From: Vitrella brassicaformis CCMP3155
Taxonomy: Eukaryota > Protista > Chromerida
Assembly (NCBI GenBank): GCA_001179505.1
Contig: CDMY01000285.1
Location: forward strand, 62,001-126,000
DNA: 64,000 bases
Direction: 5' to 3'
In this document: in pieces, positions 1 through 8,500 of the stretch
Layout of the letters: every line of letters starts with the position of its first letter
Position numbering within the stretch: position 1 is the first letter of the stretch
Program-made: the position numbers and the translations under genes
The notes under the pieces: model-generated
The model's input: only the letters and a program-made list of their open reading frames with translations
Database searches by the model: none
What the model was told of the DNA's origin: nothing

Positions 1-1004
1 GTCGGCCGGGAGGGGCGGGGGCGAGGCGGGCACATGACATATGGAGGGAATGAGGGTTGTCGCGTCAAGGCATACAGACAGACACAGACAGACAGAGCAC
101 CCATCCGGTCTATCTAAGTGAGTTGCTTCTCGACAGCTGACTGTTGGGTTGCCGTCTTGGTATCTTGGTATGTTTTCTCAGTCCGCCCGGCCCTGTGGGT
201 GGTGTGTGGGCTGGGGCAAGGCGTGGAGCTGTCCAGACCATGACAGCTGTGGGTGCGGGAGAGTGTGTGTGTGTGTGTGTGTCAGCCACCTCTCAACGGC
301 GCGACTGCCGTGTGCCTGTGCCTGCCTACGGTAGTATTTTTCCCCTTTTTGTAAATGCCTGTGCCAGAGAGGGGGTCGTTGTCTCCAAGAACGAATGAGT
401 GAATGGAATGGAATGATGACTCTCGCTCGGTGTTGGTCAAAACATCTGTCTGTGTCTGTCTGTCTGTCTGTCGGCTTCAAAAAGTGGAGTCACTGGAATC
501 ACTGGAGAGAGAGATAGAGAGAGAGAGAGAGAGCTCCCAAAGAGCTCGCGGCAGGCAGGCCACATGTCAAAGGCATCACATCACACCACATCACACCAAG
601 CCACAACACACACATGCATCCGTCTCTACGACACGCAGCGCTTAAAACGCCCCCTCCCTCCCTCCCTCCCTTTATTCGAGCAGGCAGGCAGGCAGGCAGG
701 CGTCACATCCAGACAGACCATTCGCCGCTCCAAAACTGCCCACACACCGCCCCCTCCCTCTCCCCCCCTTGATCCCTGTGTGGTACCTCATGCAGGCAGG
801 GCAGGGCAGGCTGCACATGTGCATTGCAGCCAGCAATGCACTCACACACACACACGCAGCTGGCTACCTAGTATACCTTCACACATGCCCTCACACACGC
901 ACCCACCCTCTCATGATCGACAGACACCCCACCCCAGAACGCCCCCATGACCCCATACACCCACCCGGCCGCGTGTGTCTGTCTATGGCGTGTGTGGGCG
1001 CCTA

Positions 1005-4000
1005 CTACTGTTGCTGCTGCTGCTGCTGTGGTTGCTCTTGTTGCTGCTCTTGCTGCTGCTCTTGTCCGTTGGTTCCCCAGTAGTGTGTGTGTGTGTGGTC
1101 GACATAGGGGTTGCCGTAGAAGGGGAAGGCCGGCGACGGGCCGTGGGGGTAATTCGCATACAGAACGGGAATCGCAATCGCACCCTAAAAGAGGGAGGGA
1201 GGGAGGGAGGGATGGATCAATGAATGAATGAATGACAGAGAAACATATATGGATGGCGTCGATGACGTGTGTGTGTGTGTGGACGGTTTGTTGATGTCTT
1301 ACCGGTGGAACGGTGAAGCTGAGGTCCATGCTCCCGTCTTGCTGCTGCTGCTGCTGCAAGTCGCCAGCCATTGTCTCGTCCTTGGCTGCCACCTCTCCCT
1401 CCCCCTCCCCCTCAGTGCCGCCCTCCTCCCCTTCAGCAGCCATTTTCTCGTCCTTGGCTGACGTGCCACCCTCCTCCTCCGCCGCCTTTGGTGATGATGC
1501 CGCCTCCTGCTGCTGCTGTAGCTGGTGCTGGTGCTGCTGTGCGATGGCGTGTGCCCACTCCATGGCCGCCGGCGCCATGATGATGGGCATGCCCGTGTGG
1601 GTGTCGTAGCCGATGACGGGCATCTGCATGGCCCCGCTCATGGCCTGCTGGTTGTTGAAGGCCATCTGCGCCATCGTCAGCTCGTCGGGGAAGTATCCTT
1701 GCCCGGTAAAGACGCCACCGCCCGCGGCCACGTAGGGGTTGTGGTACTGCTGCTGCTGCTGCTGCTCGTCATAAGGGCCACCACCAGCACCACCGCCAGG
1801 CACAAACTCTGGCGCATCGGCAGAGAACAGACTGGTGGTGGTCTTGGGCGCGTCGTCGGTCATGCTGACGTCGGTTTCGGCTGGCTGCTCCCCCTCGCGC
1901 TCTCTCTGTTGTGGCTTGTCGGCATCGACGTCCTGCATGGCGACGTCTGCCTCCACTTGATGTGTCGTGCCCTCGTCTTTAAATTGGGGTACTCGCAGCG
2001 CTGTGGCGGGGGCGGCGTCTGTGTCCTTGTCGGTGGGTTTGTCGGTGTCGGTGGCTGTGGTGATGGTGGTCAGGGGGATGAAGCTCTTGATCAGTGGCGA
2101 GCGCTTGCGGGTGGCCTTGGCTGCCTTGTCCTTGTCCTTGTTCTTGGCGGCTCTCTTGGACTGCACCGAGGCCTCGTTGTGCTGCATCGCACCCTAAACA
2201 CCCACACACAGACACACCGGCCTTCATGTCACGTGCGTGTTTGAGGGGAGGGGAGGGGAGGACTGGCTGACCTGGTGGTCTCTGTATTCGATGTCAACGT
2301 CTTGGTTGAATCCGTCATCTTTGCCAAAGATGCTCCGCAGCTCCAAATCAACCACCTCAAACAAAGACGAATCAACCTGCCACACCACACGCACACGCGC
2401 ACACACAGGGAGAGATGAGCAGGCAGGCAGGCAGGCATATCGTCTCTTGCCTACCGTAGCATTCCAGAGGGCGATGGTGTTGCCTCTGGGGCGGATCGAC
2501 AGCACCGCGCCGTTCTGACAAACACAGCCAGCCAAGATCAACCACCACACCAGAGAGAATGCCTCCTCTCCATCACGGGATCTCTCTCTGTCCCGCCCAC
2601 CCCACGTAGTCATCATACCTACCATTTCGTCGTGTCCTGTGAGTTGCATGCCGATCATGCTGAGAACCAGTCGCGTGTAGAAGTCCTGGCTGTCCTCGGC
2701 GGAGAAGGCCCGGATGACCCACCGGCCGCCATCCTCGTTGTGCTCATCCTCCCATATCGGCTTCACACCGTCCCTGCACACACACACACACACACAGCAG
2801 ATGGGGTGGGTGGCTCGGCTCATGTTTGAGGGCCCTTCCTTCTGTCCGTCTGTCTGTGTGCTGGTGTCACTGGTGTCACTCACCTGAAGACGCTGATATT
2901 AGAGAATTTGGGCAGTTTTTTTAAGTCGATGTTGTTCCAGAACCGCCAGTAGTCCTCCACCGTCTCGAACGACCCCATCTCGCACAGATTGCTCTCGTAT
3001 CTCGACGCGTCGTGACCAACCTTCTTCGACTTCGCCCCGGGGTCGAACCTACAGCCACACAACACAAACACAGAGAGCCACACAAACAAACACACTCACG
3101 CACACTATACTGCAAACGGGTTGGTTTCATCTTCCTCTCTGAAGCCACGTTCTCACCAGATGGCCCACTTCTGCTCCAGCCTGATCCGCCTGAGGATCAG
3201 AGCCCCCGCGCCCCTGCCTCCCTCCTGCTGCTGCTGCTGCTGCTGCTGCTGTGCCGTGTCCGCCTCGTCACCACCACCCGCCGCCTTGCCACCCTCACCC
3301 TCGTCGGCCATGGTAACACTCTCTGCTGCAGCCGGCTCCCTGTCGCCACGTGTGGGGGACCTGGTCGATGCGGCCGTCTCGCGCGTCGTCATGGGCGACC
3401 GGCTGGTGGTGGATATGGACATCTCGGTGTTTGACGTCACGGGGGTGTTGGCGGGCGGAGCGGGTGGGGCGAGGGGCGAGGGGATCTCTGGCTGCTGCTG
3501 CTGCTGTGTCACTGCTGGTTGTTGGGAGTTGGGTGGGACGGGTGTGTCGAAGGACAGAACGAACTCAACTTCTTCCTCGTTGTCCTGTGGAGACACGCAC
3601 ACACACACACACACACACACGTGTATTCGATGCGAGTGGACTCGTCTCGTCTCGTCCATGCGGTTCGGTGCGGTGTTTGTGGTGTTGTCACTCACTCACC
3701 GACACGTCAGAGCCCGCCGTGGCCCACCGTATCCGCGGCTTGGACAGTGGTGAGAGCCGGGTCTGGCTGGCTGCCTGTGCCTGTGCCAGTGGTGGTGACG
3801 ACGTCCGGCTGGAAACCGTGAGGTCCTTGTCGTCAGCCCCCTGCTGCTCGTGCTGCACCAGCGACATCTCCGTGTCAGACAACACAGTGTCCTCTATAGC
3901 ACACATCATCACACAGAGCACGCACACCACACCACAACACGTGAAGGCCAGGCCCCACGTCCCTCCCCCCTTCCATGCTCTCCCTCACCTGGCACAGCGC

Positions 4001-5225
4001 AGATCTGTGGTGACCTCTGCGGGCTCACCCCCGGCGACGGGCCGCCGATGCTCGCCGAGAGCATCGGCGACCGCCGAGGGAAAGCCGGCCGCGGCACCGC
4101 CCAGCTGATCGCTCCCCTCGACGGAGCCGACCCGGGTGTGCCGCCCCCAGACCAGTCAGCCCGCCCGGTAGCGAAGCCAATGGTGAGGTCCGACGGCCGG
4201 CTCGTCACAATCAGCGAACTTGTCCTCCTCCTCGCCCCTGCCAGTGGTGGCGAAATGTGGTGAGCCGATGGAAGACGGAGGCTGTTGGCGTTGTTGCCGC
4301 TGCTGATGAGTGGCGAGGGGCGGTTCTGCAGCTGTGGTGACGTCTGCAGGGGGGTGGGTGGGCATGACATTGAGATGACGCCGGGAGAGGGCGGGGGGCG
4401 GGAGGTGGTCTTGGGGACGACGTGGCGCAGGAAGATCATGGCCTGCTGCGGGGACCGTCGGTGCGCCTGACTCTCGTCCGACACCACCTTGGCGGGCCGC
4501 TCGGACAGCGACGGCGAAGCAATCACCACCCGCCCCTCCTTGATGCCTCCACTGATGGCGTGGCCACCAGGAGTCGACAATACACCCGGCGACGGAGGCG
4601 GCGCACACAGACCACCAGCAGGGCCACCACCAGCGGCCCCGCTGACCATGACCAAGGCCGGTGAGTCGGGCAGCGAGCCTCCATGTGACGACGATCGGGC
4701 CACAGACGGGAAAAGGGGCGACCCAATGCTCGGAGGCCGATAGTCCTTCAGCACATACAGATGCCCACTCGCCGTCGGTGCGTGTGCGGGGGTCTGGAAC
4801 CGCCCTGCCGGTGGGCGCGGCGGCCTGCTGCTCGCCGAGTCGCGGAACCTCTCGTATCCGTCTGGTGTGGCGGCGTGCGGGCCGGAGAGGTAGAGAAGCG
4901 ACCCCTTCTCCCTGCCGCCTCCAGGGGACGAAGGCAGGTCATCACGCCCTGTCGATGCTGATCCCGATGCCGTCACAGCAGCCGTCGCGATGAGTGTCCG
5001 CTGCCTGTCGTTATTGGTGCCGGTGGCGTCCTCCACCACTCCCTCTGTCGGCTCGGGGATGGGTGTGAGGGAGGCATCTTGGTGGGAGGTGGTGCCGTTG
5101 GTTGCTGGGTCTTGCAGGTTGGAGAGGGTCTGTGCGAGGAGCGGCGAGATGCCTTTGGGAGGCTTGGGGATGACTGCAGGCTGGCTCCCGGGACTCGGAT
5201 CCTTGTCGTCTTTCGCCTCTTCCAT
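1005..5225 (-). CDS. eIF4E: Very large eIF4E-family cap-binding protein (about 9 exons, ~1,100 aa). The eIF4E domain (~2272-3175) is flanked by long low-complexity N- and C-terminal extensions.
   Basis: Spliced exons give LEQKWAIW / FDPG..RYESNLCEMGSFETVEDYWRFWNNI..FSNISVFR / DGVKPIWEDEHNEDGGRW / GAVLSIRPRGNTIALWN / IEYRDHQ, which are the canonical eIF4E motifs. GT-AG introns join these in frame to ORF 3909..5225 upstream and ORF 868..2187 downstream. The last exon (1184-1005) ends QQQQ-TAG. Confidence 0.9.
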
Positions 5226-5508
5226 GTGGATAACCCCAGATCCACCTAGTCTTCGGCTGTAGACAGTTCAGGGCGGGGATCGGCGGCTGACGCTGATATG
5301 AACGTACGTTGGCCTCTCTGTGCAGTCGGTTGGAAGCGATAATAGAGATCTCGCAAGTGTCGTCCAAAGGGTCCTCAGTCGGAATGCACTCCCTTCACCA
5401 CCACCAAGGAAGGCGAGCACAATCCGTGTAACTAACTGCCCTAACCACTGATGGACGAACAGGGAGCAACCTTATCTACGTTGATCTTGCCGTAGCTGAC
5501 GTGTTGTG

Positions 5509-8500
5509 ATGAATGTGGACATCTCTCGGCCGTCTGCCGCAGCCGCGGGCGAGGGCGACCCTGCGCCATCTCCGACGCCATCGACGACTGTACAGCAACG
5601 TCAGCAGCAGGTGCATTATCTCCTGAGCAAGCTCTACCGCGTGACGTACTTCCACGACCAGCAGCTGGCCGGCGGCGGTGCGGGTAATGGGAGTTTGGTC
5701 ATCCAGGAGTTGTGCGTGTCCCTGTGGAACTCCAAGTTCGACAAGCCGCTGGTGCTGCATTGCCTCGGCGCCTCCCTGGCGCCGCCCACCGAGAGCGTGT
5801 CGGCGTACCTTGCGGGACAGGCCGACAGCCCTCATGAGATGAGCAAGAAGGACCTCTACCTCCCCAGGGAGCTCTATGAGGAGCAGTACAGGGCCAGCAG
5901 GGACTTCCTCGCAGACCTACCAAAGCGAGAGGGTAGGGTGTGTGTGTAGCGGTGTAGGCAATAGGGGAGCGATCGATCGGTTTGTTTATGGGTGGTTTGG
6001 GTGGCTTGGCCAGCTGGTGATGGTTTATGTGCTGTCTGTCTGTCTGTTGTGGTGCACTATAGGTTCGTTGTCGCACTGCGATGCCGTGTGGTCTGGTCCG
6101 CACTTTGCGTACCGGTGCTTCACGTGCGGGACCTCCACGTCATCCTGCATCTGTGTCAAGTGCTTCGAGAACTCTAACCATGTAAGGCCACACATGACGC
6201 GCTACGGACACACGTGTATGTGTGTGTGTTTGTGTGTGTAGGTGGGTCATGATTTCATTATCTACCGGTCTGACTGCGGCGGCTGCTGTGACTGCGGGGA
6301 TCCCGGTGAGCAGGCAGCGTAAGCTTAGGGCCCAAGTCAGTCAGTCAGTCGATTTGAGTGATACCTACGATGAGTAAGTGTCTTGCGTGGCTGCATTGCA
6401 TTTGTGTGTCATTCCATTTCAGATGCCTGGTCACCGTCGGGCTTCTGCCGCTTCCACCGAGGCCCCGACCCCTCCAGAGACCCCACACACCTCCTGCCCA
6501 TGCACACTCGGTAGGTACATGACATGCGCAGCCACACGCAACCACAGCACTGCTCCTCCCACACACACTCACCCCTCTCCCTTCGCACCCTTCGGGCGCC
6601 TGTGTGGTGTGTATATATGTGTGTCATCCATCAGTCGTCGTCTGGACGAGTACGGCCGTGTCCTGGTGCGTGAGCTGCTCTACCTCACCTTCGAGCCGAT
6701 GCTGCACGAGCCACCACCGCCAGACACACAACCTGAGCCACAGCCCCAGCCACTGCCCCAGCCCCCCCAACAGCCCCCCCCAGTGACCCCCCCGCTGCTG
6801 CCGCACACCAGCTCGGCGAGCCCCGGCCCCGCGGCCGACGATATGCCGCCACTCGAGGGGGGCGACGTCACCATGGAGGAGGCTCACGCACAGGAGGCCG
6901 GCGGCGACGCGCAGGGCGAGAGCGAGGGAGGTGAGGGCGGGGGCCCCGAGAGTGAGTGGGAGAGTGAGGAGGGCACCAGGTGGATCACGCAGGCGGGGCC
7001 GCAGCTGCACCGGTGGGGCACGCCGACCGTCACGCCGTTCGTTGAGGACTTGAGGCGGTCACACCGACTAAACAAGAGGGCTGCACTCATCAACGGTGCG
7101 CACGTAGTGTGTGTAGTGCAGTGCAGGGAAAAGCAGAACAACAGCCTTACTGCCTAGTTGGGTCTGGTCTGTCTGAGTGCTCGCAGGATTTTTCCTCAAG
7201 ATGTGTCGACTGCACGACGGCATCCGTCGCAAGTTCGGTCAGATGATGACCGAGTCAATCGTGCTGCCGCCCCAGACCCTCTCGCCGCGGGCTCTCGACA
7301 AGCTCCGGCGGCTCGTCGACCACGAGCTGCACGTGCCGTCGCCACAGATATTCTTCGGCTCAAACGAGACCAACCCATTTGAGTCAGTCAGTCAGTCAAA
7401 GCAGACAGACCACTGCACACCACTGCACCGAAAGACACACATGCTGATGTCATGTCGCTGTGGTGCTCTCTGTGTCTGTGCGCGTGTGTATTGCTTCAGG
7501 TTTGGGTATCCCCAGCAGCGTGACCGTGTGGTGCTTCCGAGCGACCAGATGGTGCCCCAAATTGAGGCCCCTGACCCCACCACTGCCGTCGATCAGATCA
7601 CATTTGGTGGCGAGGGCTGGGGGGAATTAGATCCCATTACATTTCTCCCCATGAGACCTACCCCTGTGGTGACGAGGGACGATCTGCCGCTGACAGTGCT
7701 GGACGTGTTGCTGCGCCACGGCCGGCTGCTGGCGTCTGGGGTGGGGACCGAGGTGACCAACCTGTGGCTGGAACTCATGTTTGACGTCTGGTTCAAACAG
7801 CAGTTCGCCGTCGTCTTCGTCAGGCACTTCAAAAGGTCAGCCAGTTCGGGAGGGAGGGGCGGGAGGGCACACAAAGGGAGAGGAGGGACGATTGTGGAGT
7901 GTGTGTGTGTGTCTAGTTTGGTTGAGGTGGACGACACGGCCTTGGATCGTGTGACGGTGCAGCTGTTCTCCGTCAGAGACCTCACGCGCAAACTCATGAA
8001 TCAACACAACCTGTGAGTAGTGCGGGAGGGACTCAGGGACTCAGGGAGGCAGAGAGGCAGAGATGCAGGGAATGGCACGGATTGACCCGAGTGTGTCTGG
8101 TGTGGTCTGGTCTGGTGTGGTGTGGTGTGTCATCAGGCTGGAGGTGCTCTTCAAGACGCTCTTTGGGCTGCTTGACAGGGCCACCATCACCCCAGACGCC
8201 GGCTGCGAACGGCTCGATGTGCGTAGCGTCGATCAAGATAACCACCAGACACCCATCCTCCACGTGTGTGTGTGCATGAGTGTCTGTGTGTCTGCAGATG
8301 AACCACCCGATCTTCCGGCTGCGTCTGTACGTCCACAGCCTGAGCACCCTCAAGCTGCTCAACGACCACCCGCTGCTGCTGGACCAGGTCATCCGGACCC
8401 CACACATGCGGCTGCAGATGTGGGACAACGGGTGGCTCGAGGCCGTCCAACGCGCAGAGGGGATCAACCCACACACACGCAAGACCGACCGGTGGGCAAG

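What the first reader, a model, noticed from the sequence alone, without database searches (positions are those of the whole stretch)
1005..5225. Giant eIF4E carrying a PAM2-like PABP-binding motif: a candidate direct cap-to-poly(A) bridge
Seen: a complete eIF4E domain sits inside a ~1,100-aa protein, with ~600 aa of S/P-rich N-extension and ~350 aa of Q/E-rich C-extension. The C-extension contains SLFSADAPEFVP (1798-1833), which matches the PAM2 consensus (L-N/S-x-x-A-x-E-F-x-P) except for F at the L position. Known: PAM2 binds the MLLE domain of PABP, and trypanosomatid EIF4E4 uses PAM2 motifs in its N-extension to bind PABP1. Inference: this alveolate may have independently evolved an eIF4E that closes the mRNA loop or nucleates granules without eIF4G, here with the motif C-terminal to the domain. 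I do not know of this architecture in alveolates.
Basis: partly seen in the sequence, partly recalled or inferred. Interest (0 to 1): 0.75.

Follow-up and report, generated by a model that had tools for sequence, protein, structure and literature searches.

The report
Giant eIF4E with PAM2-like motif
This Vitrella gene encodes a 1,136-residue cap-binding-type protein (eIF4E) whose disordered tail carries a short motif resembling the one that docks proteins onto poly(A)-binding protein; the motif recurs in related alveolate eIF4Es, so a direct cap-to-tail link is plausible but no binding was tested.

Summary
A 9-exon, all GT-AG, minus-strand gene (5225..1005) encodes 1,136 aa. It is identical to the public Vitrella brassicaformis protein CEL99637.1, which is listed as uncharacterised. 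Intron-less contigs from three studies remove all eight introns, so the region below 2194 is coding sequence of the same transcript.

Only residues ~610-810 fold, as an eIF4E (Pfam 127.6 bits; TM 0.85-0.87 to solved eIF4Es). The cap-contact and eIF4G-contact positions are mostly kept (W56 to Y, K162 to T). Both extensions are predicted disordered.

SLFSADAPEFVP lies exactly at 1833..1798. It scores 13-17 bits on Pfam PAM2, below the cutoff of 20.

The motif is not a private invention of Vitrella. The protein belongs to a well-supported clade of extended eIF4Es (Perkinsus, Chromera, Colpodella, marine metatranscriptome ORFs). PAM2-like motifs are strongly enriched in their C-extensions and absent from their N-extensions. 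One Colpodella site passes the Pfam cutoff. Chromera and two Perkinsus gene models lack the motif.

Binding to PABP is untested, and "without eIF4G" is not supported. An eIF4E with a PAM2 motif is known in trypanosomatids, and giant eIF4Es have been noted in Toxoplasma. Verdict: a new variant of a known kind, of moderate interest.

The parts
1005..5225 (-). Complete CDS of the extended eIF4E gene (9 exons, 1136 aa, stop TAG 1007-1005)
   Evidence: Splice model and translation. Identical to CEL99637.1. All 8 introns are removed in cDNA-type contigs.
5226..5414 (-). 5' UTR (minimum extent)
   Evidence: Spliced contigs reach 5387 (X6 record 6) and 5414 (X7 record 9).
3201..5225 (-). N-terminal extension, residues 1-605, S/P-rich, predicted disordered (exons 1-3, two introns inside)
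   Evidence: Composition and 29 SP/TP sites. pLDDT below 50 almost throughout. No Pfam family.
3531..3738 (-). Conserved N-extension block (residues ~465-495): basic R-x-R-W-[AGS]-[ST], then an acidic/Ser run, then an F-x-L motif. Intron 2 (3585-3699) lies inside this span.
   Evidence: The R/K/Q-W-[AGSH]-[STE] motif was found in the N-extensions of 14 of 33 clade members, including Chromera. The family consensus contains F-x-L-P-P-P-V-V.
2164..3200 (-). eIF4E core, residues 606-790 (exons 3-8, five introns inside)
   Evidence: Pfam IF4E 127.6 bits. AF2 pLDDT above 90 over ~610-810. Foldseek TM 0.85-0.87 to solved eIF4Es. phmmer E 1e-23 to human eIF4E and 4EHP, with residue mapping.
1008..2163 (-). 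C-terminal extension, residues 791-1136, Q/A/G-rich, predicted disordered apart from a helix continuing from the core (intron 8, 1185-1302, lies inside)
1798..1833 (-). PAM2-like motif SLFSADAPEFVP (residues 901-912)
   Evidence: Pfam PAM2 13.3-16.9 bits, cutoff 20. It is the best match in the C-extension to the validated Leishmania EIF4E4 PAM2 peptide, p=0.027 against shuffles. Homologous-position motifs occur in relatives.
1579..1611 (-). Short block G-Y-D-T-H-T-G-M-P-I-I (residues 975-985), shared with the Chromera orthologue (F-Y-D-S-H-G-F-P-L-L)
   Evidence: Read by eye from the sequences printed. Not tested statistically.
1008..1184 (-). Exon 9: aromatic (Y/F/P/G) then Q/E-rich tail
   Evidence: Y/G-rich tails are the most widely shared feature of the clade's C-extensions in an unbiased 10-mer comparison.

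Best explanation
The gene encodes a regulatory paralogue of the cap-binding protein eIF4E. It belongs to a clade of extended eIF4Es found in Vitrella, Chromera, Colpodella and Perkinsus and in marine metatranscriptome ORFs of unassigned origin.

Shown: the gene is one spliced transcript. Its product is a compact eIF4E fold flanked by about 600 and 350 residues of predicted disorder. The cap-sandwich and phosphate-contact positions are largely kept (Tyr for Trp-56, as in 4EHP and dinoflagellate clade-1 eIF4Es; Trp-102, Glu-103, Arg-112, Arg-157 and Trp-166 kept; Lys-162 is Thr). The dorsal eIF4G/4E-BP contact motif is kept.

Inferred: the C-terminal disordered tail presents a PAM2-type linear motif (F-S-A-D-A-P-E-F-V-P) that docks onto the MLLE domain of cytoplasmic poly(A)-binding protein. 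One polypeptide would then hold the cap and the PABP-coated poly(A) tail of an mRNA, as Leishmania EIF4E4 does with a PAM2 motif in its N-terminal extension.

Three features point to a selective or storage/repression role in mRNP assemblies rather than general initiation: the Ser/Pro-rich N-extension with a conserved basic-then-acidic motif, the Q-rich and Tyr/Gly-rich tail, and the weaker-type cap pocket. The direction of the effect, activation or repression, is not determined.
For: - Gene model and transcript continuity.
- eIF4E identity and fold.
- Residue mapping onto human eIF4E and 4EHP.
- The motif is recognised by the curated PAM2 model, and PAM2 is the only Pfam family reported for those pieces: Vitrella 16.9 bits, P. 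marinus 14.1, Colpodella 16.3 and 21.9 (the last above the cutoff of 20).
- Enrichment in 38 relatives: [LF][NS]xxAxx[FW]xP gives 6 hits in 5 members against 0.01 expected. The hydrophobic-xxxAxx[FW]xP form gives 10 hits in 8 members against 0.18 expected. No shuffle out of 2000 reaches either count. The equally long N-extensions have none.
- Independent seed: with the crystallographically validated Leishmania peptide MNPNATEFMP (PMC6379680), the best C-extension match is the same site in 9 members. Six reach p<0.02 and three more, Vitrella among them (p=0.027), lie between 0.02 and 0.03. No N-extension reaches p<0.02.
- In an unbiased 10-mer comparison, the top window that is not Tyr/Gly-rich is a PAM2-like L-K-A-N-A-A-P-F.
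- Motif carriers lie in both halves of a clade with 100/99 support.
- The motif lies in a region with pLDDT below 50, as expected of a linear motif.
- PABPs with four RRMs and the C-terminal PABP domain are reported as general across eukaryotes, and a Vitrella PABP sequence is in that data set (PMC5862402). Plasmodium PABP1 has an MLLE domain (PMC5760745).
Against: - The Vitrella motif is below Pfam's gathering score. It has Phe for the consensus Leu-3 and Ser for Asn-4.
- The motif is patchy. It is absent from the Chromera orthologue and from the P. olseni and P. chesapeaki gene models. P. chesapeaki genomic DNA keeps only the first half, then diverges.
- The environmental variants are not reported by Pfam.
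- My regular expressions were written after I had seen the sequences. The Leishmania-seed and 10-mer tests reduce this bias but do not remove it. Family members are related, so hits are not independent events.
- No binding data exist. The MLLE domain of Vitrella PABP was not checked.
- Toxoplasma's extended eIF4E2 did not bind m7G resin or eIF4F components, so cap binding by extended alveolate eIF4Es cannot be assumed. Its relationship to this clade is untested.
Confidence: 0.5

Rival explanations
1. The eIF4E paralogue is real, but the PAM2-like string is a non-functional or differently used piece of a fast-evolving low-complexity tail. The protein would act through its core and its prion-like Q/Y/G-rich regions, for example as a non-cap-binding mRNP or stress-granule component like Toxoplasma eIF4E2, without direct MLLE docking.
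For: The score is below the Pfam threshold. The motif is missing in Chromera and in two Perkinsus gene models. The most widely conserved tail feature is the Tyr/Gly-rich segment, not the PAM2-like motif. Toxoplasma eIF4E2 has N- and C-extensions, does not bind m7G resin and joins stress granules.
Against: Enrichment is 50- to several-hundred-fold over shuffles, only in the C-extensions, and across both halves of the clade. One Colpodella site passes the Pfam cutoff. The key anchor positions (hydrophobic-3, Ala-7, Phe-10, Pro-12) are the ones conserved.
Confidence: 0.3
2. The protein is a general translation initiation factor that replaces eIF4G as the scaffold. A cap-eIF4E-PABP-poly(A) closed loop would form without eIF4G.
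For: There is a precedent in Leishmania EIF4E4 (PMC6379680). Cap-contact residues are mostly kept. A PAM2-like motif is present.
Against: The dorsal eIF4G-binding motif is intact, so nothing suggests independence from eIF4G. In Leishmania, eIF4G3 still binds EIF4E4. Tyr-56 and Thr-162 predict a weaker cap pocket. Chromerids are reported to have several eIF4E homologues (PMC5862402 supplement), so a canonical factor probably exists. The long disordered, Q/Y-rich extensions are unlike those of housekeeping eIF4Es.
Confidence: 0.12
3. The motif binds an MLLE domain (or another peptide-binding domain) of a protein other than PABP, for example a HECT E3 ligase of the UBR5 type. It would then control turnover of the eIF4E paralogue rather than mRNA circularisation.
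For: From general knowledge, MLLE domains also occur in UBR5/HYD-type ligases.
Against: No such ligase was identified here. PABP is the abundant and universal MLLE protein.
Confidence: 0.05

Closest known systems
Trypanosomatid EIF4E4 (and EIF4E3), e.g. Leishmania EIF4E4-PABP1 (PMC6379680)
   Same: Both are eIF4E family members with a long disordered extension that carries a PAM2-type motif (Leishmania M-N-P-N-A-T-E-F-M-P; here F-S-A-D-A-P-E-F-V-P). Both retain the dorsal eIF4G-binding surface. In both, eIF4E would itself touch PABP.
   Different: The motif is N-terminal in trypanosomatids and C-terminal here. The protein here is about 1,100 aa with two extensions. Binding has been measured and crystallised for Leishmania and is untested here. 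No common origin is evident, so it is probably convergent, but that was not tested by phylogeny.
Toxoplasma gondii eIF4E2 (TGME49_315150, 50 kDa) and eIF4E3 (TGME49_312560, 214 kDa) (bioRxiv 10.1101/2023.10.09.561274)
   Same: [quoted passage not shown] TgeIF4E2 is described as having an insert between the 2nd and 3rd conserved aromatic residues, and this clade also has 16-22 residues there against 9 in human. TgeIF4E2 relocates to stress granules together with PABP.
   Different: Orthology is not established, because the Toxoplasma sequences could not be retrieved with the tools. That paper reports no PAM2 motif. TgeIF4E2 did not bind m7G resin. TgeIF4E3 has degenerate aromatic residues, whereas the Vitrella core is well conserved.
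Alveolate eIF4E clades 1-3 of Jones et al. 2015 (PMC4330643)
   Same: Tyr at the Trp-56 position, as in dinoflagellate clades 1 and 2. Dinoflagellate eIF4E-2a has a C-terminal extension of 200-270 aa.
   Different: This protein lacks the 12-13-aa insertion between W73 and W102 that marks clade 1. It lacks the deletion after E103, the R112-to-Cys change and the K162-to-Val/Ala change of clade 2. It lacks the Trp-56 of clade 3. I found no mention of a PAM2 motif in the passages searched in those papers.
Metazoan 4EHP (eIF4E2, Class II) and Class III eIF4E (PMC1260017)
   Same: Tyr at the Trp-56 position, as in 4EHP. The W43-kept, W56-to-Tyr pattern matches the residue rule for Class III. It is equally similar in sequence to 4EHP and to eIF4E1 (E 1e-23).
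   Different: Those proteins are about 200-250 aa without PAM2 motifs. 4EHP reaches mRNAs through partner proteins. Class III is described only in Metazoa.
Canonical PAM2 proteins (Paip1/2, ataxin-2, eRF3, LARP4; consensus LNxxAxEFxP, PMC7356810)
   Same: A short motif in a disordered region with Ala-7, Glu-9, Phe-10 and Pro-12 identical to the consensus.
   Different: Phe replaces Leu-3 and Ser replaces Asn-4. The Pfam score is below the cutoff. The host protein is an eIF4E.

Membership tests
eIF4E family (Pfam PF01652) | Profile match above the curated cutoff | tested here: met
   127.6 bits against a cutoff of 28.7, E 4.8e-37. Single exons also hit.
eIF4E family (Pfam PF01652) | Cupped-hand alpha/beta fold | tested here: met
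   AF2 pLDDT above 90 over ~610-810. Foldseek top hits are all eIF4E, with target-normalised TM 0.85-0.87 and rmsd 2.2-2.4 A.
eIF4E family (Pfam PF01652) | Cap-contact residues (W56, W102, E103, R112, R157, K162, W166 of human eIF4E) | tested here: inconclusive
   By alignment, W102, E103, R112, R157 and W166 are kept, W56 is Tyr and K162 is Thr. This is compatible with cap binding, possibly weaker. No biochemical test was possible.
eIF4E family (Pfam PF01652) | Dorsal eIF4G/4E-BP contact motif (S/T)VxxFW ending at W73 | tested here: met
   T-V-E-D-Y-W aligns to human T-V-E-D-F-W.
PAM2 motif (Pfam PF07145) | Profile match above the curated cutoff (20 bits) | tested here: not met
   13.0-13.3 bits in the long context and 16.9 bits in a 36-aa context. 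A relative's site (Colpodella) reaches 21.9 bits.
PAM2 motif (Pfam PF07145) | Consensus L-N-x-x-A-x-E-F-x-P with hydrophobic anchors at positions 3 and 10 and a small residue at 7 | tested here: inconclusive
   F-S-A-D-A-P-E-F-V-P: A7, E9, F10 and P12 are identical, position 3 is Phe (hydrophobic, not Leu) and position 4 is Ser (not Asn). The consensus is taken from PMC7356810.
PAM2 motif (Pfam PF07145) | Located in an intrinsically disordered region | tested here: met
   pLDDT is below 50 across 887-974.
PAM2 motif (Pfam PF07145) | Conservation in orthologues | tested here: inconclusive
   Present in P. marinus (two copies or alleles), Colpodella (two sites) and at least 7 environmental relatives. 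Absent from Chromera and from the P. olseni and P. chesapeaki models.
PAM2 motif (Pfam PF07145) | Binds the MLLE domain of PABP | not testable with these tools
   No complex prediction or binding assay was available. The MLLE domain of Vitrella PABP was not retrieved.
Trypanosomatid EIF4E3/EIF4E4 group | PAM2 motif(s) in an N-terminal extension | tested here: not met
   There are no PAM2-like hits in the N-extensions of this clade. The motif is C-terminal.
Dinoflagellate/alveolate eIF4E clade 1 (Jones 2015) | 12-13-aa insertion between W73 and W102 | tested here: not met
   W654 to W682 is 28 residues, against 29 in human.
Dinoflagellate/alveolate eIF4E clade 2 (Jones 2015) | Small deletion after E103, R112 to Cys, K162 to Val/Ala | tested here: not met
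   W-E-D-E-H-N-E-D-G-G-R-W has the same length as human, with Arg-112 kept. Position 162 is Thr.
Dinoflagellate/alveolate eIF4E clade 3 (Jones 2015) | Trp kept at position 56 | tested here: not met
   Tyr is at that position.
Class III eIF4E (Joshi 2005) | Trp-43 kept and Trp-56 replaced by Cys or Tyr | tested here: met
   The residue rule is met (rule). Class III was described only in Metazoa, and no phylogenetic link was tested, so this is a resemblance and not a placement.

The most novel reading that the evidence does not exclude
A clade of extended eIF4Es (Vitrella, Colpodella, Perkinsus and unassigned marine relatives that are probably of the dinoflagellate lineage) docks directly onto the MLLE domain of PABP through a C-terminal PAM2 motif. 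This would be a second, convergent origin, after trypanosomatid EIF4E4, of an eIF4E that itself links cap and poly(A) tail. Here it is coupled to a prion-like Tyr/Gly/Gln-rich tail that would place such looped mRNAs in granules.
Probability: 0.4. Interest if true: 0.7.

Novelty: new variant of a known kind. Interest (0 to 1): 0.58.

Why it matters
In the standard closed-loop model, eIF4G links cap-bound eIF4E to PABP. The only documented exception is trypanosomatid EIF4E4, described as unique (PMC6379680).

A second, independently evolved eIF4E-PABP contact would show that the architecture of the cap complex is more plastic than assumed. [quoted passage not shown]

It would also give a concrete hypothesis for the unexplained extended eIF4E paralogues of alveolates, such as Toxoplasma eIF4E2 and eIF4E3. 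The claim can be tested directly with one peptide and one domain.

If the motif does not bind, the gene remains an ordinary, already annotated, divergent eIF4E paralogue with low-complexity tails.

Tried and rejected
- Word-index protein searches returned only Perkinsus and unnamed environmental relatives. Named dinoflagellate or apicomplexan orthologues, including Toxoplasma eIF4E2/3, could not be retrieved. Their membership of the clade and their motif status stay open. In one search my E-value limit was too strict. One search repeated the search at 0.001 with no gain.
- Organisms of the environmental ORFs: cluster look-ups gave no names. Two ORFs come from runs ERR1719191 and ERR1719424. 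From memory, these look like Tara Oceans metatranscriptome accessions.
- Pfam scans of full-length proteins or whole C-extensions under-report PAM2 because of HMMER's filters. Short pieces were needed.
- phmmer of the 30-aa motif region against PDB chains found nothing useful, because PAM2 peptides shorter than 20 aa are not in that set.
- The ESM Atlas feature search gave only generic eIF4E clusters.
- Looking for the second half of the motif downstream in P. chesapeaki and P. olseni genomic loci found none. The P. marinus motif lies in one uninterrupted last exon, so a missed intron is not an obvious explanation.
- Vitrella PABP: a fragment is printed in a paper's supplement, but no tool could take it to the full-length protein, so MLLE presence was not verified.
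- Rejected: a separate gene or UTR below 2194 (refuted), and placement in dinoflagellate clades 1, 2 or 3 by diagnostic residues (see membership test).


Full report
**Observation**

The minus strand between 5225 and 1005 can be spliced into nine exons with GT-AG introns throughout. This gives a 3411-nt reading frame of 1136 codons. An exhaustive HMMER search with an ORF covering exons 5-7 returned a 1136-aa protein as top hit. It is identical, residue for residue, to my model. It is CEL99637.1 / UniProt A0A0G4EP99 of Vitrella brassicaformis CCMP3155, listed as an unnamed or uncharacterised protein.

Contigs of three public runs from three studies (X6, X7, X1) lack the introns. Five joints are listed explicitly: 2193/2272, 2376/2455, 2514/2623, 3048/3157 and 3893/3989. 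The other three follow from the record coordinates of a 4754-nt and a 1953-nt contig: 1184/1303, 2773/2884 and 3584/3700. The two contigs are separated only by the CAG repeat inside exon 3 (~3214-3258), where short-read assembly breaks.

Exon 8 is joined in frame to exon 7. The 5' UTR reaches at least 5414.

**The protein**

Pfam IF4E matches with 127.6 bits. An AlphaFold2 model built on 35 relatives is confident only over ~610-810 (pLDDT above 90). It is below 50 nearly everywhere else. The folded part superposes on solved eIF4E structures with target-normalised TM 0.85-0.87.

Alignment to human eIF4E and 4EHP (E about 1e-23 for both) gives these equivalences:
- W43, W46, V69, W73, D90, W102, E103, R112, W113, R157 and W166 are kept.
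- W56 is Tyr, W130 is Tyr and K162 is Thr.

[quoted passage not shown] A clade-1 member, A. carterae eIF4E-1a, binds m7GTP (bioRxiv 10.1101/2024.02.20.581179). The pocket is therefore plausibly functional but possibly weaker. The eIF4G/4E-BP contact motif is intact (T-V-E-D-Y-W).

The N-extension (605 aa) is S/P-rich with 29 SP/TP sites. The C-extension (346 aa) is Q/A/G-rich.

**The motif**

SLFSADAPEFVP is residues 901-912, nt 1833..1798, as stated. The published consensus is LNxxAxEFxP, with hydrophobic anchors at positions 3 and 10, a turn-stabilising Asn-4 and a small Ala-7 (PMC7356810). The Vitrella motif keeps A7, E9, F10 and P12. It has Phe at position 3 and Ser at position 4.

The curated PAM2 profile is the only Pfam family that reports on exon 8: 13.3 bits, E 0.071. 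On a 36-aa piece it gives 16.9 bits, E 0.0048. Both are below the cutoff of 20 bits.

**Relatives**

The nearest proteins by eIF4E core are:
- Perkinsus marinus XP_002777115 and XP_002776448 (626 and 627 aa).
- P. olseni and P. chesapeaki homologues.
- Chromera velia Cvel_11644 (1121 aa).
- Colpodella angusta (1189 aa).
- Many unnamed ORFs of 450-800 aa from marine metatranscriptomes.

A maximum-likelihood tree of 73 cores places all of these in one clade with 100/99 support. Amoebozoan sequences lie outside it. Within it, Vitrella and Perkinsus group at 98/87, and Chromera and Colpodella join them at 98/94.

By the diagnostic residues in Jones et al. 2015 and the 2024 preprint, the clade fits none of the three described alveolate clades. 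It has no W73-W102 insertion, no deletion after E103 and no R112-to-Cys change, and it does not keep W56. I could not map the paper's GI numbers to these accessions. Some members may therefore already sit in its trees.

**Is the motif more than chance?**

PAM2-like strings occur C-terminal to the core in these relatives:
- P. marinus: F-N-A-D-A-P-E-F-C-P.
- Colpodella: two sites, F-S-I-N-A-T-P-F-T-P and F-N-V-N-A-A-P-F-V-P.
- Environmental members, with forms such as L-S-A-N-A-A-V-F-M-P, M-K-A-N-A-A-T-F-T-P, L-R-P-T-A-A-P-F-Y-P and L-K-A-[NT]-A-A-P-F-x-[FY].

Pfam PAM2 scores them as follows:

| Site | Bits |
|---|---|
| P. marinus | 14.1 |
| Colpodella site 1 | 16.3 |
| Colpodella site 2 | 21.9 (above the cutoff) |

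In the C-extensions of 38 relatives (6358 aa), the shuffle test gave:

| Pattern | Observed | Expected from composition-preserving shuffles |
|---|---|---|
| [LF][NS]xxAxx[FW]xP | 6 hits in 5 members | 0.01 |
| Looser hydrophobic-xxxAxx[FW]xP | 10 hits in 8 members | 0.18 |

No shuffle out of 2000 reached either observed count. The N-extensions (6849 aa) have none.

I wrote those patterns after seeing the data, so I added two less biased tests.
- The crystallographically validated Leishmania EIF4E4 peptide served as seed (PMC6379680). It picks the same site as the best C-extension match in nine members. Six reach p<0.02 and three more, Vitrella among them (p=0.027), lie between 0.02 and 0.03. 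No N-extension reaches p<0.02.
- In an all-against-all 10-mer comparison of the tails, the leading windows are Tyr/Gly-rich. The first window that is not Tyr/Gly-rich is a PAM2-like L-K-A-N-A-A-P-F.

Motif carriers lie in both halves of the clade.

Evidence against constraint:
- Chromera has no convincing copy.
- The P. olseni and P. chesapeaki gene models lack it. P. chesapeaki genomic DNA keeps the first half (V-E-F-N-A) and then diverges into a purine-rich tract.
- In P. marinus the motif sits in one uninterrupted last exon.

**Interpretation**

The most economical reading is that a PAM2-type linear motif is an old but frequently lost or remodelled feature of the C-terminal tail of this eIF4E clade, and that Vitrella retains a good copy.

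It is also changed in three ways.
- The motif is a clade trait rather than a Vitrella invention.
- It does not imply independence from eIF4G. In Leishmania too, EIF4E4 binds both PABP1 and eIF4G3.
- Very long eIF4Es in alveolates have been noted before. Toxoplasma eIF4E3 is 214 kDa. Toxoplasma eIF4E2 is 50 kDa, has N- and C-extensions and an insert between the second and third aromatic residues, does not bind m7G resin, and is found in stress granules with PABP.

Three observations make me favour a selective or storage-type mRNP role over general initiation. The cap pocket is of the weaker type. The Tyr/Gly/Gln-rich tail is the best conserved tail feature. Chromerids are reported to have several eIF4E homologues. 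This preference is an inference.

**What is missing**

No tool here could model or measure peptide-MLLE binding. The MLLE domain of Vitrella PABP was not verified. PABP with its C-terminal domain is reported as general across eukaryotes, and a Vitrella PABP fragment is in that data set. Plasmodium PABP1 has an MLLE domain.

Full-text searches combining eIF4E, PAM2, PABP and MLLE, or PAM2 and MLLE with alveolate names, returned the trypanosomatid work but nothing on alveolate eIF4Es. This is absence in a partial library, not proof of novelty.

**Verdict**

It is a new variant of a known kind (eIF4E with a PAM2 motif) that can be tested with simple biochemistry. Interest is 0.58.

The scan's earlier notes on this genome did not bear on this locus.

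Noticed in passing
window 3531-3738 (-), residues ~465-495; also P0004 375-395 and other clade members: The N-extension carries a conserved short module: basic R-x-R-W-[AGS]-[ST], then a Ser/acidic run, then F-x-L-(P/S). It is seen in 14 of 33 clade members, including Chromera (family consensus). It looks like a basophilic-kinase site next to a casein-kinase-type acidic cluster. Its function is unknown.
   Followed up: partly
window 1008-1184 (-) and the C-termini of most clade members: A Tyr/Gly-rich (prion-like) tail is the most widely shared feature of the C-extensions, with windows such as Y-G-G-D-Y-x-Y-Y-G. The Vitrella version is Y/F/P-rich followed by a poly-Q/E run.
   Followed up: partly
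window ~5500-7200 (+): The divergently transcribed neighbour has a UBR-box zinc finger (Pfam zf-UBR, 25.0 bits against a cutoff of 25.2, E 2e-5, on ORF 5876-6241). It is probably an N-recognin-type E3 ligase gene. The two genes share an intergenic region of about 100-300 bp.
   Followed up: partly
window 1-1004: The spliced contig X6 record 5 (4754 nt) continues 2807 nt beyond position 700, towards and past the window start. Either the 3' UTR is very long or the assembler merged an overlapping neighbouring transcript.
   Followed up: no
introns of the gene, e.g. window 3600-3625, 2776-2800, 1265-1290, 2385-2400: Several of the short introns (78-118 nt) contain (GT)n or (CA)n dinucleotide tracts close to the acceptor site (sequence). 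The reads tool skipped several of these stretches as repeats.
   Followed up: no
L003:5150-5330 (Perkinsus chesapeaki JAAPAO010000112.1): The homologous last exon keeps Y-Y-Y-Y-T-H-S-V-E-F-N-A and then runs into a duplicated purine-rich tract encoding K-G-N-R-G-K-G-G-G-E repeats. This replaces the second half of the PAM2-like motif. It could be real divergence or an assembly or annotation artefact.
   Followed up: partly
window 1579-1611 (-); P0004 ~948-960: A short block, G-Y-D-T-H-T-G-M-P-I-I in Vitrella, resembles F-Y-D-S-H-G-F-P-L-L in Chromera, in otherwise unalignable tails. It may be another linear motif.
   Followed up: no
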